64,000 bases of DNA from Setoptus koraiensis (taxonomy: Eukaryota > Animalia > Arthropoda). Each line of letters opens with the position of its first letter. Position 1 is the stretch's first letter. The DNA is taken from contig CM106585.1 in NCBI GenBank assembly GCA_048013815.1, positions 19,716,001 to 19,780,000 of the forward strand, written 5' to 3'. This document shows positions 9,180 to 14,786 of this stretch, piece by piece. Below the pieces are notes generated by a model, which did not search any database, had not been told where the DNA came from, and saw only the letters and a list, made by a program, of their open reading frames with translations. The translations under genes and the position numbers were made by a program.

Positions 9180-9800
9180 GTAGGCGTGTAACCTCCGGTC
9201 TAGATTAGATTTGCTAGCGAGCTTGTACAGACAACAAGCAGACAACAAATAAAATTTATTCATTTTTCATCAGCCGTTCGACGTACTATATACCATCATA
9301 TCTCGACGTTATAACAACGATATATATCTGAACGATCGACCAACTACGACGACATTTGTTAATGTATCATTATCACTATTATTATCATTATTAATATTAT
9401 TATTACCATAATCTTTATTATTATTACTACTACGATAAATCTGCTCCACAGCATTATTCTAGCATCTCCATACGAGCAGCAGCTGCATCCCAATTGATAC
9501 CAACGCATCACTATTGTCATTATCTATTCTTGTAATCGACGCCAACAGACTATTCTATTATTATTACTAATTGTTATTACTATTGATATCATTATAAATT
9601 AGATACCGTCTCGCTCGGAGATTACAACATTTGGACGCACACTCACACACACCAATACAATAATAGGCAAATCACCAAAAACAACAACAACAACAATCCA
9701 TACATAAATATTAAGATAGATGTGATTATTTAATTTATTTAAAACACCTTCTTTTCAGCCATCATTGCAACCACACAGTAGGACAGGCAAAAGCAGGACA

Positions 9801-11279
9801 ATGACTACCGTTAACATCAATCGCAATCTTAGCGATCAATTCTATCGCTATAAGATGCCAAAACTTGTGGCCAAGGTTGAGGGCAAAGGCAACGGAATCA
9901 AAACAGTTATAGTTAATATGGTTGAGGTTGCTAAATCATTAAATAGGCCGCCTATGTACCCAACAAAGTATTTTGGTTGTGTCTTAGGAGCTCAAGTCAA
10001 TTTTGATAACAAGAGCGAACGTTACATTGTCAATGGCGCTCATGATGCCGCTAAATTGCAGGATCTATTAGATGGTTTCATACAAAAGTATGTGCTATGT
10101 CAATCGTGCGAAAATCCAGAAACAATATTATCTGTTAATAAGAAAAAAGAAGTTATTGGTACAAATTGTATGGCATGCGGTTATGCTGGCACCATACCGG
10201 GAGTCAATGACAGATTAGCCTCTTATATATTGAAGAATCCACCCCCAAAACCAGCGCCAGTTACAGCACCCACTGCTGCCGCAGCGGCCGCCGCCGCCGC
10301 TGCTGCAGGTGGATCAACCCCGACCAATGATAATAGTGCTACATCAAATCATAAATCACACAACAGTAAATCTAATAAGTCTTCAAAGTCCAATAAACGC
10401 TCTTCGGAACAAGCAAGCCAATCAACAAATAACAATTCAACATTAGATAATCATCAATTATCTATCAATGATAATAGCGCATCATTTGATCATAATGATG
10501 AAACTGGTGATAACGATGATGATGATGAAGACTGGGGTGAAGAGACTGACGCGGATGCTGTCAGAAAAAGAATGGATCTTTTGAGTGCCGGTGCTAAAAG
10601 TCTTATGCTCAATGATGATTTAGAAAAGAGCCAAGAAGAACGATCGCAAATATTTTTTGAATACGTGGAAAAGAAGTTTAAAGAATCAGACCTCACTTCG
10701 GCCGAACATCAGAAGGCAATCAAGACGGAGGCCGAACGACTCGACATAAGTGATAAAGCAGTTATAGTCCTTTGCGAAATTCTATTTAGAGAAAACCTTC
10801 CAGAGAACGCAAAACTCTACAAAAATTTGTTCCTAAGATTTACTCTTCAAAACCTTAAAGCTCAGCGTTACCTTCTTAAAGGTCTAGAATTGACAATTAC
10901 ACAACAGCGAGATCAATTGATGCCCAGAGTAACGCCAATATTTCATTTATTTTATGAGCTTGAAATTATAGTAGAAGAGGTGTTCTTGGAATGGTATGCC
11001 AAAGGCCAAAAGAAAAGTAACAAACTCGATGAAGTGTCGCATGAGATTATCGAGAAGTCCTTGCCCTTTATAAAATGGTTGAAAGAAGCTCCAGAGGAGT
11101 CTGATGATGAAACGGATGAAGATGATAAGGTTGATATAGATTTTGACGATAGAATAGTGGGTGATGCTATTAGAGTTGAAGAAGAAAAACGACCCGAATC
11201 AACATCAGGCACAACAAAACAGTTAACAGCCACAGGGAACAAAAAGCCAGAAGATGATATTGATATTGATGCAATTTAA
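9801..11279 (+). CDS. EIF5: Eukaryotic translation initiation factor 5, intronless CDS, 492 aa
   Basis: N-terminal DQFYRYKMPKLVAKVEGKGNGIKTVIVNM, a zinc-ribbon CQSCENPET...CMACG, and a C-terminal W2 domain (FIKWLKEAPEESDDE). Confidence 0.97.
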   Translation: MTTVNINRNLSDQFYRYKMPKLVAKVEGKGNGIKTVIVNMVEVAKSLNRPPMYPTKYFGCVLGAQVNFDNKSERYIVNGAHDAAKLQDLLDGFIQKYVLCQSCENPETILSVNKKKEVIGTNCMACGYAGTIPGVNDRLASYILKNPPPKPAPVTAPTAAAAAAAAAAAGGSTPTNDNSATSNHKSHNSKSNKSSKSNKRSSEQASQSTNNNSTLDNHQLSINDNSASFDHNDETGDNDDDDEDWGEETDADAVRKRMDLLSAGAKSLMLNDDLEKSQEERSQIFFEYVEKKFKESDLTSAEHQKAIKTEAERLDISDKAVIVLCEILFRENLPENAKLYKNLFLRFTLQNLKAQRYLLKGLELTITQQRDQLMPRVTPIFHLFYELEIIVEEVFLEWYAKGQKKSNKLDEVSHEIIEKSLPFIKWLKEAPEESDDETDEDDKVDIDFDDRIVGDAIRVEEEKRPESTSGTTKQLTATGNKKPEDDIDIDAI

Positions 11280-11423
11280 TAATATGAAATTCTATAAATC
11301 ATGATCCACTTTAACAACTCTCCTTTTATCATCTTTCTAAGTTAGTTAAATCAAGTTGATTCTAATCATTTTGTTTGACGAGATTCATTGGTACAACATA
11401 CTGTTGTGCCGCGTGATCTCATC

Positions 11424-12616
11424 TCAACTGCGACTCACTTCTATCTCACTCAAATCTATGTGAAATAACATCTGAGCTAGAATCTGTGAGGACTCTGAAC
11501 CAAAAGACAATTCTGCCTTAATCAAGTCAACGAAATTGTTATACGTTCCAAGCCATTTCTTGTCACCATGACTCACTACACGTTCTCTCAAACATTGAAA
11601 TATGTCAAACAATTTTGTCTGGAATTCATTCTCATTCATAAGGTCAAAGAAGTACTTCGTCACGCACGCGGTGTCTTCATCTGTGATGCCTTCAGGACAG
11701 CCTACCCATTCTGAAATTAGACTGCAGATACTGTCCAGATCGGTAACACCGCAGATATTTGCACGCCCAGTGGGTTCGTTGAGCATTATTGGTTTGCAAT
11801 TAGAGGTGTCAAATTTGGCCTCGTTGGTGGCAACTTTCGTTGAATCGTTGCTCAACTCTGAAGAGATTGCTTCAGGTTGCTTCTTGGAAGTGCTTGGCAT
11901 AATTTGAAGGTCCTTAGTAGTTTTAGTGAACATGTTTCTGATATCTCTTGACTTTGGAGGTTCTTTGTGGAGGATTGACTTATTTTTCTTAGAATTTTGT
12001 TTCCGATACTGTCTTCTCAATTGATTGCTTGCTTCCTCTTCTGATATCTCAAAACCATCAAGAGAGGATGTATTTGTTTCTAGTTCAATGACAGAGGATT
12101 TGCCTCTTGGTTGATCGGAAAAAATTTGATATTCTTTATATGGCAAAAGTCTCTTTTGAGCAACGGACTCAGTAATCCATTCTGGCCTAACAATCCTGTC
12201 GTCTGGCCTAAGTTGTTTTATTTTAGCAAATGATAGGCTAGTGGCAATCATAAATTTAGTTGTTTGATATCTATAGTATGGATGGTATTCGCCGCCATTT
12301 AATAGGACTAACCGCTTTAATTCATCTGCAGTCGGTTTTGTGCGTCCATTCACATTGATAGAAACTCCATTGAAGATATCAGTTTTCATGGATTTGTGTC
12401 TGTGTTTGAGAACTTCACGTATTTCTTCATTTTGGTCTGCAAGCTTGTGCTTCTTTGCCTGCATGTAACCTGAGTATTGACAAAAAACAAAAGAGTTAGT
12501 ATTCATGCATTGTTGTAATATGTGTGCACTCTCTAATTTTGAGAAAATTGCTCACCCTTTCCATCCATAAAACCATTGGTTCTGTTAAAAGTGTTTAGTC
12601 CGGACCTATCTCCCAT
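11424..12616 (-). CDS. REV1: REV1 homolog reduced to BRCT plus the C-terminal polymerase-interaction domain: join(12556..12616, 11424..12469), about 368 aa
   Basis: The N-terminal GYMQAKKHKL and BRCT (IFNGVSINVNGRTKPTADELKRLVLLNGG...TTKFMIATSL...IVRPEWITESV) match REV1. The C-terminus (NICGVTDLDSICSLISEWV...EDTACVTKYFFDLM) resembles the REV1 CTD. An 86-bp GT-AG intron lies at 12470-12555. Confidence 0.88.
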
Positions 12617-12934
12617 GGTTCGATAGTGTTGTCCGTAGGCCTTGCATTACCGAAATTAGTAGCTGATCATTGGGTGATCAGTAAATAAAAATGGTGCGAT
12701 TGCTCCCTGTGTTATGACAATGAATTGTTTGCAATCTATGCAATCTATAATCTTTAGTTATTATTTTACTATAACTAAAGATTTTACTGATGGATAGATA
12801 ATGTGGGATTTATAAAAATAATATGCATAGATGGATATTTGCTATCGCAGTGTTGCTCATTAAACGCACTGTGTGAGAGCGTTGGGACAGCCCAACAGCA
12901 GTATCAGGTGGTGCCCAATGAAAACAAACGGCGA

Positions 12935-12997
12935 AAACAACAACAACGGCAACAACGGCAACAACTGCAACAACAGCAACAACAGCAACAACAGCAG
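12935..12997. repeat. CAA/CAG trinucleotide repeat
   Basis: Visible directly, between the REV1 and DRAM start codons. Confidence 0.9.
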
Positions 12998-13771
12998 CGG
13001 CGCCTACAAGAGAAACGTATTTTGTGTCACACACAAGCACCATTGTACCACTGGCATTACATGTATGATTATTCTGCTTCCAATATACTGTTAATGTTGA
13101 CACTGACGAATGCTAACAATAGTTTGAGTATTACCATTATTATTACCATTGCATTTATTATCACCTAAACAAATCTAATCAAAATCAATTATTATTATTC
13201 ATCATCATTGATATCATCAGCGATCTTGATTGATCACGATTGAAAAAATTCTCACTAATAAGGTGGCTATTTTCAAACCACATTACGTCATTGATAAATA
13301 AACACTGGGTGGTGGTGGTGGCGGCGGACCAACAGCCAGACAATATCGAACAATCAAAGAATAAGAAGAAGCAGCCAATGTCTTTACATATACATCTATT
13401 AGCTATCGGCCATTGTTATTATTATTAGATCCCACCAATAGAGAAATTACGACATCCATTATAAAAACCTGATGGAAATATCTCACAATCAGAAAAAAAT
13501 ATATCAATCTATCAGTCAGTTCACGGTGCACACCTTTTAATACATCGGCAATAACAAGCATGAGTTATCTTTGTTACCTGTCGATTAACCATAACATTAG
13601 CAACGTTCCCTTTGTTTGGACTTGAGCACAGTCTATCATCATTATTAAATAACACTGCTATTACACATAAAACATAATAGCTACTTAACCACCCTTCATC
13701 ATACAAATAGAGGCTTTTGTGATCAATATTTGAGTCAATTGAACCCAAGCAATCTCTAGATCACAGTCAAC

Positions 13772-14786
13772 ATGTTGAGCAAAGTGCATTATTTACCTAT
13801 TATCACCTTCATATTGATGCCGTCCAGTTTCATCATCACGTAAGTGCCATACTCATAACAACAGGCCAAAACACTTATCAAACAACGAGCCTATCTAATG
13901 CCCATCTCACTAACACTATCTTCCATCGTATTCAACCCGTGTTAACAAAACCATTGTTTTCCTCTTGTCTACTTGTCAATCTATGCACATCAGTTATCTG
14001 ATATCTATCTTTTTGGGGCATGTTGAGGTGACATTTCCCTACATATCGGACACTGGCGTACATGTACCAGAGAGTTGTATATTTAGTCAATTATTTAACA
14101 TTGTGTCCTTCCTAATGGCGGCCAACATTTATATTAGATACAAACAAGTGGAACAACAATGTAGAGATCATCTATTGCCAGACACAAATAGAGTGCTGTC
14201 AAGGAACAGACTTGCATTATTTGTTGGACTATTATCGTGTCTTGGACTATCGATAGTGGCCAACTTTCAAGAATTACAACTATTCACTATCCACATAATT
14301 GGCGGCTTCTCAGCATTTGGCTTTGGCCTCGTTTATTTGTGGCTACAAACTCACTCCTCCTACATGATGTATCCCATAGTCAAATCAGGTTTATTCGTTG
14401 CTAGAATTCGACTAGCACTCAGTATTATATTGACATGTACTTTTATCGTTAGCGGTGTGCTGGGCCCACTCTCTATGAGATACTTTCATGGTCGAGATCC
14501 AACAAAATGGCAACCAGACGATGGTGGTTACCTGTTTCATGTGATAAGCTCCATCAGTGAATGGTTGTCGGCTTTTGCGATTGACTTTTTTATTTTGAGT
14601 TTCGCCCATGAGTTCAAATATATGAGTATAAGCTCTCCAAAGTTCTACATTCTATCTACTGTTATTAACATTGAGGAGCGAAGGTCGATTGACTCGAATT
14701 ACGGCATCAATGTTGTCACATCCGATATCAGCAGAAGTCAGAGGGCATCCAGACAGACAAGGAATAGAGATCTAATGACAAGGTAG
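13772..14786 (+). CDS. DRAM: DRAM/Frag1/Sfk1-family membrane protein: join(13772..13839, 13994..14786), about 286 aa
   Basis: Exon 1 (MLSKVHYLPIITFILMPSSFII) ends at GTAAGT. Exon 2 contains FPYISDTG..PESCIFSQLFN, IVANFQE and SEW, with six hydrophobic segments. Confidence 0.88.

What the first reader, a model, noticed from the sequence alone, without database searches (positions are those of the whole stretch)
11424..12616. Scaffold-only REV1: BRCT and CTD kept, the whole Y-family polymerase domain gone
Seen: one open, spliceable CDS of about 368 aa in which a REV1-type BRCT is joined to a REV1-type CTD by about 130 aa of low-complexity linker. It has no catalytic motifs and no room for them, and eIF5 lies directly downstream. 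Known: animal REV1 is roughly 1000-1250 aa, with a central deoxycytidyl transferase and UBMs; its CTD recruits Pol eta/iota/kappa and REV7 independently of catalysis. Inference: this is a natural minimal translesion-synthesis adaptor.
Basis: partly seen in the sequence, partly recalled or inferred. Interest (0 to 1): 0.82.

Follow-up and report, generated by a model that had tools for sequence, protein, structure and literature searches.

The report
Polymerase-less REV1 in gall mites
This gall-mite gene is a real, expressed and conserved version of the DNA-damage-tolerance protein REV1 that has lost its whole DNA polymerase part and keeps only its two docking domains, and related mites show the same loss or go further.

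Summary
A two-exon gene on the minus strand (12616..11424, one 86-nt intron) encodes 368 aa. It has a REV1-type N-helix plus BRCT (E 1e-23 to human REV1 BRCT), a 119-aa linker and a REV1 C-terminal domain (profile-profile probability 98.5%; model superposes on human CTD at TM 0.81). No Y-family core and no ubiquitin-binding motif is detectable.

It is not an assembly artefact or a pseudogene. The spliced form occurs in contigs of two runs. dN/dS against an 83%-identical orthologue is 0.125. 26 eriophyoid-mite cluster representatives share the architecture, including Aceria tosichella and Fragariocoptes setiger.

New context:
- An oribatid (Medioppia) and a velvet mite (Dinothrombium) also have polymerase-less REV1, with a UBM. 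Halotydeus keeps a full-length gene.
- Some eriophyoids have also lost the CTD at the syntenic locus, leaving BRCT plus a conserved PIP-like motif.

The most likely function is a non-catalytic scaffold between PCNA or the primer junction and polymerase zeta or RIR-bearing polymerases. That function is inferred, not shown. I could not search the whole genome for a second, full-length REV1. No paper describing this was found. The scan had not noted it on other DNA.

The parts
12556..12616 (-). Exon 1: start codon and the first 20 codons plus 1 nt (MGDRSGL...), the conserved N-terminus of the family
   Evidence: Translation. The same N-terminus occurs in 20 of the 22 aligned orthologues; the other two begin at a later Met because the ORF was called inside exon 2. 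RNA-type contig of X7 reaches 12635.
12470..12555 (-). Intron, 86 nt, GT..AG
   Evidence: Joint 12467->12554 (cut +2, CT..AC on the + strand) in contigs of X17 and X7. It is retained in the DNA-type contig of X1. An 86-nt intron sits at the same codon position in the orthologue L001.
11424..12469 (-). Exon 2: the rest of the CDS with the stop codon (11424-11426)
   Evidence: Open frame. The spliced CDS is 1107 nt and encodes 368 aa.
12117..12467 (-). N-terminal helix plus REV1-type BRCT domain (residues 22-138)
   Evidence: PDB phmmer gives 2ebw at 1.1e-23 and yeast REV1 at 4e-12. Pfam BRCT 3.5e-10. Nearly invariant in 23 orthologues. omega 0.047. The Gly aligned with yeast G193 (the rev1-1 site) is invariant.
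11763..12116 (-). Linker, residues 139-256. It replaces the polymerase core and UBM region of full-length REV1
   Evidence: The spacer is 119 aa against at least 518 aa in full-length REV1s. No polymerase or UBM match. omega 0.18.
11928..11951 (-). Conserved linker motif S194-R-D-I-R-N-M-F201, a PIP-box-like short linear motif (inferred)
   Evidence: The pattern [RKM]D[IV]Rx[MFYL][FLM] occurs in 30 of 45 eriophyoid representatives, with RDIREFF variants. It is absent from 155 non-eriophyoid REV1 relatives.
11496..11762 (-). REV1 C-terminal domain (residues 257-345): beta-hairpin plus four-helix bundle
   Evidence: hhalign 98.5%. PDB hits are REV1 CTD only. pLDDT above 90 and TMt 0.81 to 4gk0_E. 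omega 0.17.
11427..11495 (-). C-terminal tail (residues 346-368), predicted as two short extra helices
   Evidence: Model helices at 325-333 and 339-346 in exon-2 numbering. Partly conserved ('ASQNL.QLI').

Best explanation
The gene is the eriophyoid-mite orthologue of REV1. An internal deletion has removed the deoxycytidyl-transferase (Y-family) core and the ubiquitin-binding motifs. What remains is the N-terminal helix plus BRCT, a 119-aa linker with a PIP-like motif, and the C-terminal four-helix-bundle domain.

Shown:
- the architecture;
- transcription and splicing;
- purifying selection on all three parts;
- conservation of this architecture in 26 eriophyoid cluster representatives;
- orthology with full-length REV1 by phylogeny.

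Inferred:
- The protein works as a non-catalytic translesion-synthesis scaffold.
- The BRCT module, perhaps helped by the PIP-like motif, docks on PCNA or the 5'-phosphorylated primer-template junction.
- The CTD binds REV7 (polymerase zeta) on one face and RIR peptides of inserter polymerases or POLD3 on the other.
- Polymerase switching would therefore survive, while C-insertion opposite abasic sites and G adducts, and the reading of ubiquitinated PCNA by UBMs, would be lost.

My confidence that this is a genuine functional polymerase-less REV1 orthologue is about 0.9. My confidence that its main role is the CTD-mediated adaptor role is about 0.55.
For: Domain identity. Absence of the core and UBM.

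Expression and splicing: the spliced joint is present in contigs of X17 (labelled 'RNA?' by the tool) and X7 (run kind not given), whose contig ends match transcript ends at 11379 and 12635. The intron is retained in the deep DNA-type contig of X1. The Aceria tosichella orthologue P0023 is a complete 457-aa UniRef entry of the same architecture.

Selection: against the orthologue in L001 (83% aa identity, same intron position), dN/dS is 0.125 overall, 0.047 for BRCT, 0.18 for the linker and 0.17 for the CTD, with dS 0.79.

CTD residues: E, W, D, V, K, Y, D and L of the mite CTD are identical to the human residues they align with, and the residue aligned with human L1203 is Phe. By my numbering these are human E1174, W1175, D1186, V1190, K1192, Y1193, D1196 and L1197. 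From my knowledge of the structural literature (the solved REV1 CTD complexes that appear as hits) they lie in or near the RIR pocket, and L1203 lies at the REV7 interface. The E-W pair and the Asp aligned with D1186 are invariant in the eriophyoid CTDs.

Orthology: a concatenated BRCT+CTD tree puts all short forms plus Halotydeus and three unnamed full-length REV1s in one clade (98-99% SH-aLRT). Its internal order resembles the species tree: a trombidiform-like group, an oribatid-like group and the eriophyoids.

Genetic plausibility: in Drosophila, deleting the CTD sensitises flies to MMS, whereas catalytic-dead, BRCT-deleted or UBM-mutant single alleles are not sensitive when TLS is otherwise intact (PMC11309488).
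Against: - No binding partner was examined. I could not check whether REV7, REV3, Pol eta, Pol kappa or POLD3 RIR motifs exist in this genome.
- At least two eriophyoid lineages have lost the CTD at the syntenic locus: P0027 in L007-L009 and P0025 in L010. 19 of 45 eriophyoid representatives have no detectable CTD. The adaptor role is therefore dispensable in close relatives, and the universally kept part is the BRCT plus the PIP-like motif.
- The UBMs, which help recruit REV1 to ubiquitinated PCNA, are missing.
- The second PIP-like motif of other eriophyoids (QxTMxDFV) is degenerate here (KPIMLNEP).
- AlphaFold modelled the BRCT poorly (pLDDT 36-59), although sequence homology is strong.
- A second, full-length REV1 in this genome was not excluded by a direct search.
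Confidence: 0.6

Rival explanations
1. The selected function lies in the BRCT module alone. The protein would be a PCNA-binding or primer-junction-binding factor, formed by the N-helix, the BRCT and the PIP-like motif. The CTD would be a still-constrained but dispensable appendage on its way out, and polymerase bridging would not be the main role.
For: BRCT-only orthologues sit at the same GCV_H/MRCK synteny as CTD-bearing ones, with no CTD-coding sequence within 6 kb. They are scattered among CTD-bearing relatives in the BRCT tree. Their ORFs typically end 10-25 residues after the RDIREMF motif. The BRCT is by far the most constrained part (omega 0.047 against 0.17; near-invariant).
Against: In this lineage the CTD has omega 0.17, well below neutral. 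It keeps the residues aligned to the human RIR pocket and folds with pLDDT above 90. 26 of 45 representatives keep it. Only two BRCT-only loci were verified at the DNA level. Others could be ORFs cut by sequencing errors.
Confidence: 0.2
2. The short gene is one of two REV1 genes. A full-length catalytic REV1 exists elsewhere in the genome, and the short protein acts as a regulator or competitor of it.
For: Full-length REV1s (Halotydeus L011; unnamed P0055, P0072, P0129) fall in the same 98-99% clade as short forms. Making all short forms one clade is not rejected (p-AU 0.79), and that topology is compatible with an old duplication. The whole genome could not be searched.
Against: The exhaustive search of 1.84 billion representatives with this protein returned no full-length REV1 closer than those of distant animals, although it returned 45 eriophyoid-type clusters. 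The internal order of the acariform clade resembles the species tree, as expected for orthologues. Dinothrombium's short gene shares BRCT and CTD intron positions with Halotydeus's full-length gene. A scan of JGI metagenomes with the REV1 core returned none of the four metagenomes that hold long eriophyoid contigs among its best 80 loci. This is weak evidence, because more than 532 matches existed.
Confidence: 0.15
3. It is an assembly or annotation artefact, or a decaying pseudogene. The polymerase exons would have been dropped, hidden in an intron, or lost from a dead copy.
For: None beyond the unusual architecture. Public gene models of relatives are often wrong: Fragariocoptes is fused to a kinase, Medioppia is fused to Mpv17, and Halotydeus is split in three.
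Against: BRCT and CTD lie in one uninterrupted exon. The same sequence is present in independent contigs of X1, X7, X16 and X17. Single-ORF orthologues occur in many assemblies. omega is 0.125. Spliced transcripts exist.
Confidence: 0.02

Closest known systems
Canonical eukaryotic REV1 (human, mouse, yeast, Drosophila; 760-1660 aa in the relatives found here)
   Same: It has the same N-terminal helix plus BRCT: 49% identity to human over 87 aligned columns in the structure match to 2ebw and phmmer E 1.1e-23. It has the same C-terminal four-helix-bundle domain (hhalign 98.5%, TM 0.81). It is orthologous by phylogeny.
   Different: It lacks the whole Y-family core (N-digit, palm, fingers, thumb, PAD) and all UBMs. 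The BRCT-to-CTD spacer is 119 aa instead of at least 518 aa. It carries a lineage-specific PIP-like motif that is absent from 155 other REV1 relatives.
Engineered separation-of-function REV1 alleles, for example the Drosophila Rev1-DTD catalytic-dead, deltaBRCT, UBM and deltaCTD alleles (PMC11309488)
   Same: They embody the same concept. The scaffold role via the CTD can be separated from catalysis, and catalytic-dead flies are not MMS-sensitive when TLS is otherwise intact.
   Different: Those alleles keep the folded polymerase domain and are laboratory constructs. Here the domain is physically deleted in nature and the result has been maintained across a whole mite superfamily. In flies the catalytic activity becomes important when Pol zeta is missing, a back-up that these mites cannot have.
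Short REV1 of other acariform mites (Medioppia subpectinata ORF in L004; Dinothrombium tinctorium L005; metagenomic P0052, P0096, P0127, P0200)
   Same: BRCT and CTD are joined without a polymerase core. In Medioppia both lie in one uninterrupted 311-aa ORF.
   Different: Several of these keep a UBM between BRCT and CTD: P0200 is above the Pfam cut-off, and P0052, P0064, P0096 and P0115 match the UBM region of the REV1 middle HMM. The eriophyoid proteins have none. They also lack the RDIREMF motif.
BRCT-only REV1 remnants of other eriophyoid mites (P0027, P0025 and relatives)
   Same: They are orthologous, with an almost identical N-terminus, BRCT and PIP-like motif, and the same synteny as the CTD-bearing P0019.
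   Different: They have lost the CTD as well, which the window gene keeps.

Membership tests
REV1 (orthologue by descent) | N-terminal REV1-type BRCT with a preceding helix | tested here: met
   PDB phmmer: human REV1 BRCT 1.1e-23 and yeast REV1 4e-12, with XRCC1 far weaker at 6e-4. Pfam BRCT 3.5e-10.
REV1 (orthologue by descent) | C-terminal REV1 CTD (beta-hairpin plus four-helix bundle) | tested here: met
   Pfam REV1_C alone is below its cut-off (14.8 against 26.5 bits). However, hhalign gives 98.5%, E 3.9e-15, PDB hits are REV1 CTD only, and Foldseek gives TMt 0.81 and rmsd 1.9 A to 4gk0_E.
REV1 (orthologue by descent) | Groups with REV1 proteins in a phylogeny | tested here: met
   The eriophyoid clade has 100% support. 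It lies within a 98-99% clade that includes the full-length Halotydeus REV1.
REV1 (functional definition: deoxycytidyl transferase) | Y-family catalytic core (IMS palm/fingers, HhH thumb, IMS_C little finger) | tested here: not met
   No IMS, IMS_C or HhH match at E<=1 in 23 of 23 orthologues. An HMM of 57 REV1 middles (core at positions 128-546) finds nothing in the protein or in six-frame ORFs of the window and L001-L003. The spacer is only 119 aa.
REV1 (functional definition) | Ubiquitin-binding motif(s) (UBM) between the core and the CTD | tested here: not met
   No PF14377 match at E<=1 in 23 of 23 eriophyoid proteins. A UBM is present in P0200 and in the full-length controls P0043, P0044 and P0072.
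REV1 (functional definition) | The CTD binds REV7 and the RIR motifs of Pol eta, iota, kappa and POLD3 | not testable with these tools
   There is indirect evidence only. Residues aligned with the human RIR pocket are identical or conservative. The partners were not located.
Y-family DNA polymerases | Catalytic palm with the conserved acidic residues | tested here: not met
   As above. The protein should not be filed as a polymerase.
PIP-box PCNA-binding proteins | Q-x-x-[ILM]-x-x-[FY]-[FY] or an accepted non-canonical variant, with shown PCNA binding | tested here: inconclusive
   The window protein has S-R-D-I-R-N-M-F (I at position 4, M-F at positions 7-8, no Q). Relatives have RDIREFF. A second motif is the canonical QLSITDFF in P0040. 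It is conserved as a short motif in an otherwise unalignable linker, but binding is untested.

The most novel reading that the evidence does not exclude
REV1 is being dismantled stepwise and repeatedly in acariform mites. The polymerase core is lost at least twice (eriophyoid and oribatid-type lineages; Dinothrombium). The UBM is then lost in eriophyoids, and the CTD is lost in several eriophyoid lineages. The N-helix, the BRCT and a newly evolved PIP-like motif stay almost invariant throughout. On this reading, the indispensable REV1 activity in these animals is neither catalysis nor polymerase bridging but a BRCT-mediated action on PCNA or the primer junction that has not been characterised as a stand-alone function.
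Probability: 0.25. Interest if true: 0.78.

Novelty: new variant of a known kind. Interest (0 to 1): 0.62.

Why it matters
REV1 is the organiser of mutagenic translesion synthesis and a drug target. Whether its polymerase activity or its scaffold role is the essential one has been argued for two decades from engineered alleles.

Here nature has done the experiment. A whole superfamily of mites, and apparently some oribatid and velvet mites, keep a selected, expressed REV1 with the catalytic domain physically removed. Some relatives go down to a BRCT-only protein.

This gives three things:
- a minimal natural scaffold for structural and biochemical work;
- a graded series for asking which REV1 functions animals can live without;
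- a testable link between reduced translesion synthesis, mutation spectra and the extreme genome streamlining of these mites.

The finding is comparative and the mechanism is untested. It is a good lead rather than a surprise that overturns current views.

Tried and rejected
- **Assembly artefact or hidden exons: rejected.** BRCT and CTD are in one exon. Independent contigs and many single-ORF orthologues agree.
- **Pseudogene: rejected.** omega is 0.125 and the gene is spliced and expressed.
- **Relics of the polymerase core or UBM in the linker: none found.** Only insignificant matches to the low-complexity post-UBM part of the REV1 middle HMM.
- **RDIREMF as an ancestral REV1 motif marking the deletion edge: rejected.** It occurs in 0 of 155 non-eriophyoid relatives.
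- **Word-indexed searches with alignments.** The taxonomic spread of short forms therefore rests on a few named proteins.
- **Identity of the three unnamed full-length proteins in the acariform clade (P0055, P0072, P0129).** It could not be established.
- **BRCT-only tree.** It is poorly resolved, so the number of independent CTD losses is uncertain beyond the two loci checked.
- **AlphaFold on the 27-sequence alignment.** It gave a confident CTD but a poor BRCT. I ran no further search on it.
- **Metagenome scan for a REV1 core in eriophyoid-bearing samples.** The result was uninformative to weakly negative, because only the best 80 of more than 532 loci are shown.
- **Literature.** Five full-text searches and one supplement search found nothing on REV1 architecture in mites. 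The Aculops genome paper discusses domain losses in general but not REV1.
- **Earlier scan notes.** They gave no record of Y-family polymerases or Pol zeta in this genome.
Full report
**1. What is there**

The region holds one gene on the minus strand. Exon 1 (12616..12556) starts at an ATG in a CCATGG context and encodes MGDRSGLNTFNRTNGFMDGK plus one base. An 86-nt GT..AG intron follows (12555..12470). Exon 2 (12469..11424) runs uninterrupted to the stop.

The splice junction is observed, not only predicted. Contigs of runs X17 (labelled 'RNA?') and X7 join 12467 to 12554 (cut +2, CT..AC on the plus strand). The deep DNA-type contig of X1 keeps the intron. The X7 contigs end at 11303 (3' end of eIF5), 11379 and 12635, so they look like transcript ends. 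This gives a 3' UTR of about 45 nt and a 5' UTR of at least 19 nt.

eIF5 (9765..11279, plus strand; Pfam eIF-5_eIF-2B 9e-37, W2 4e-17) is the convergent neighbour.

**2. Domain identity**

- **BRCT.** Residues 22-138 are a REV1-type BRCT with its preceding helix. phmmer against PDB gives human REV1 BRCT at 1.1e-23 and yeast REV1 at 4e-12 to 3e-10, whereas XRCC1 reaches only 6e-4. Counting along the yeast chain in that alignment, the second Gly of the HGG motif is G193, which to my knowledge is the site of the classical rev1-1 mutation. The aligned Gly is invariant in all 23 aligned mite proteins.
- **CTD.** Residues 257-345 are a REV1 C-terminal domain. Pfam REV1_C is sub-threshold for this protein alone, although 21 of 23 orthologues match it at E<=1. 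The fragment alone hits only REV1 CTD chains in PDB (E 5e-4 to 4e-3). A profile of nine eriophyoid CTDs aligns with a profile of eleven CTDs of full-length REV1s at probability 98.5%, E 3.9e-15. The AlphaFold model has pLDDT above 90 here, with a hairpin and four helices. It superposes on the human CTD of the REV3-REV7-REV1 complex (4gk0_E) at TMt 0.81 and rmsd 1.9 A, and the top Foldseek hits are almost all REV1.
- **CTD residues.** In the alignment, the mite residues are identical to human E1174, W1175, D1186, V1190, K1192, Y1193, D1196 and L1197. They are conservative at L1159 (Ile), L1172 (Ile) and L1203 (Phe). The numbering is mine, counted from chain 2lsk, which I take to span 1157-1251. 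From my knowledge of the structural papers these residues line the RIR pocket and part of the REV7 face.

**3. What is missing**

The spacer between BRCT and CTD is 119 aa. In 57 full-length REV1 relatives it is 518-1420 aa, and the distribution is cleanly bimodal.

No IMS, IMS_C, HhH or UBM Pfam family matches any of the 23 eriophyoid proteins even at E<=1. Full-length controls show all of these families.

I built an HMM from the middle regions of the 57 full-length proteins (792 positions; core at 128-546, UBMs at about 598-683). It finds nothing significant in this protein, in any six-frame ORF of the 64-kb window, or in the orthologous loci L001-L003.

**4. Is it alive?**

The closest orthologue (P0001, contig L001) shares eIF5 synteny and the same 86-nt intron position. 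Nei-Gojobori estimates over 368 codons are dS 0.79 and dN 0.099, giving omega 0.125. By region, omega is 0.047 for BRCT, 0.18 for the linker and 0.17 for the CTD. This is purifying selection on every part, not neutral decay.

**5. Who else has it**

The first database search returned 24 proteins of 344-457 aa that contain both BRCT and CTD (P0001-P0024). Named ones are:
- Aceria tosichella 'DNA repair protein REV1' (457 aa);
- a Fragariocoptes setiger model mis-fused to a kinase tail and named EGFR;
- an 'Olea europaea' hypothetical protein that nests inside the Aceria-like clade, and so is most likely mite DNA in the olive assembly.

The window protein groups with P0001 and Fragariocoptes at the base of a 100%-supported eriophyoid clade of 26 representatives. 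The source organism is therefore an eriophyoid (gall or rust) mite. This fits the runs that hold the sequence, which include phyllosphere and air metagenomes and plant-labelled runs.

**6. Beyond eriophyoids**

The exhaustive HMMER search also found short BRCT+CTD proteins at 25-35% identity.
- **Medioppia subpectinata (oribatid).** A single uninterrupted 311-aa ORF (L004 5983-6915) holds the BRCT and a complete CTD. The annotated fusion to Mpv17 is a model error.
- **Dinothrombium tinctorium (velvet mite).** BRCT, a UBM region and the CTD lie within about 1.4 kb with no core.
- **Metagenomic single ORFs.** P0052, P0096, P0127 and P0200 cluster with Medioppia. P0200 has a UBM above the Pfam cut-off.
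- **Halotydeus destructor.** It has a complete REV1 (BRCT, IMS, HhH, IMS_C, CTD) split into three gene models. It shares BRCT and CTD intron positions with the short Dinothrombium gene.

A BRCT+CTD tree puts all of these in one clade (98% SH-aLRT). The clade has three parts: a trombidiform-like group that mixes short (Dinothrombium) and full-length (Halotydeus, P0055, P0072, P0129) forms, an all-short oribatid-like group, and the all-short eriophyoids. This resembles the species tree, so the short genes look like orthologues of the single REV1, and the core appears to have been lost more than once. The AU test does not reject a single origin of all short forms (p 0.79), so the number of losses is open. 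[quoted passage not shown]

**7. A further step of reduction**

Nineteen of the 45 eriophyoid cluster representatives are ORFs of 195-315 aa with no detectable CTD.

I checked two of them at the DNA level.
- P0027 (215 aa) is present on six contigs, of which the three fetched (L007-L009) come from three JGI metagenomes.
- P0025 is in L010.

Both sit in the same GCV_H/MRCK-kinase neighbourhood as the CTD-bearing P0019 (L002). GCV_H begins about 40-100 nt after their stop codon, and no CTD-coding sequence exists within 6 kb. They are interleaved with CTD-bearing relatives in the weakly resolved BRCT tree; for example, P0025 sits next to P0010 and P0012. The CTD has therefore been lost again in some lineages, while the N-terminus and BRCT stay almost unchanged.

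**8. The linker is not featureless**

A motif [RKM]-D-[IV]-R-x-[MFYL]-[FLM] occurs in 30 of 45 eriophyoid representatives. It reads SRDIRNMF at residues 194-201 here, and RDIREFF or RDIRDFF in some relatives. The BRCT-only ORFs typically end 10-25 residues after it. It is absent from the 200 residues after the BRCT in all 155 non-eriophyoid relatives.

A second motif, Q-x-[TS]-[MI]-x-x-F-[VFI], is found in 12-20 of 45 representatives. It is the canonical PIP box QLSITDFF in P0040 and is degenerate here (KPIMLNEP).

Both fit the spacing of PCNA-interacting peptides. I read them as PIP-like motifs that may compensate for the lost UBMs. This is inference only.

**9. Mechanism**

Established knowledge of REV1, summarised in PMC11309488, is as follows:
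- the BRCT and its helix bind PCNA and 5'-phosphorylated primer-template junctions;
- the UBMs bind ubiquitinated PCNA;
- the CTD recruits Pol eta, iota, kappa and Pol zeta;
- the core inserts C opposite abasic sites and adducted G.

The mite protein keeps the first and third of these. The most likely mode of action is therefore a non-catalytic bridge between the stalled primer terminus or PCNA and other translesion polymerases.

In Drosophila, loss of the CTD sensitises flies to MMS, whereas catalytic-dead, BRCT-deleted and UBM-mutant single alleles do not. Catalysis matters only when Pol zeta is absent. A catalytic-domain-free REV1 is thus genetically plausible.

The CTD losses in sister lineages caution that the most strongly selected function may reside in the BRCT/PIP-like module.

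**10. What could not be done**

The whole genome could not be searched for a second REV1 core or for REV7, REV3, POLH or POLK. Indirect evidence against a full-length paralogue is as follows.
- No full-length protein closer than those of distant animals appeared among the hits, although 45 eriophyoid clusters were found.
- The four JGI metagenomes that carry long eriophyoid contigs are absent from the best 80 REV1-core loci. This is weak evidence, because more than 532 matches existed.

Earlier notes of this scan on the same genome mention other domain losses, including POLQ with almost no central domain, CHD1 and Crk, and a first-reader hypothesis linking weak translesion synthesis to genome compaction. 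I did not test these.

**11. Novelty**

Full-text searches found no description of a natural polymerase-less REV1, in mites or elsewhere. The Aculops lycopersici genome paper reports domain losses in conserved genes but does not mention REV1 in its text or in the 200 of its 225 supplementary files that were searched. Public entries simply call the short proteins 'DNA repair protein REV1' or mis-model them.

I rate this a new variant of a known kind: a REV1 orthologue that fails the family's defining catalytic feature while keeping its scaffold domains.

Noticed in passing
L007 6001-6648, L008 592-1239, L009 693-1340, L010 187-1134: In other eriophoid species the syntenic REV1 orthologue is BRCT-only (215-315 aa). 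GCV_H begins about 40-100 nt downstream and there is no CTD-coding sequence within 6 kb. P0025 also carries an internal tandem duplication of its linker.
   Followed up: partly
L004 5983-6915 (Medioppia subpectinata, CAJPIZ010002762.1): The annotated protein CAG2105468.1 fuses a short REV1 with an Mpv17/PMP22 exon. The real gene is a single 311-aa ORF with a BRCT and a complete CTD.
   Followed up: yes
L011 8001-11027 (Halotydeus destructor, JAIUWE010000099.1): One full-length REV1 gene is annotated as three separate genes: BRCT+IMS, HhH+IMS_C, and REV1_C.
   Followed up: partly
P0042 (Fragariocoptes setiger KAG9510704.1) and P0022 (Olea europaea CAA3026417.1): The Fragariocoptes 'EGFR' model is a kinase C-terminus fused to the short REV1. 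The olive 'hypothetical protein' on a 36-Mb scaffold nests within the Aceria-like mite clade, so it is probably mite DNA in the olive assembly.
   Followed up: partly
window 12890-13010: There is a CAA/CAG/GGC-rich microsatellite about 300 nt upstream of the REV1 start. Contigs of run X1 break there (12932-13007 were skipped as repeat).
   Followed up: no
window 9765-11279 (+): eIF5 carries a long Ala-, Ser- and Asn-rich and acidic insert between the eIF-5/eIF-2B domain and W2. Its stop codon lies only 144 nt from the stop codon of REV1 on the opposite strand (11280-11423). RNA-type contigs leave about 75 nt between the two 3' ends.
   Followed up: no
window 13965-14786 (+): There is a 273-aa ORF with several hydrophobic stretches, probably a membrane protein, upstream of REV1 on the other strand. 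It was not analysed.
   Followed up: no
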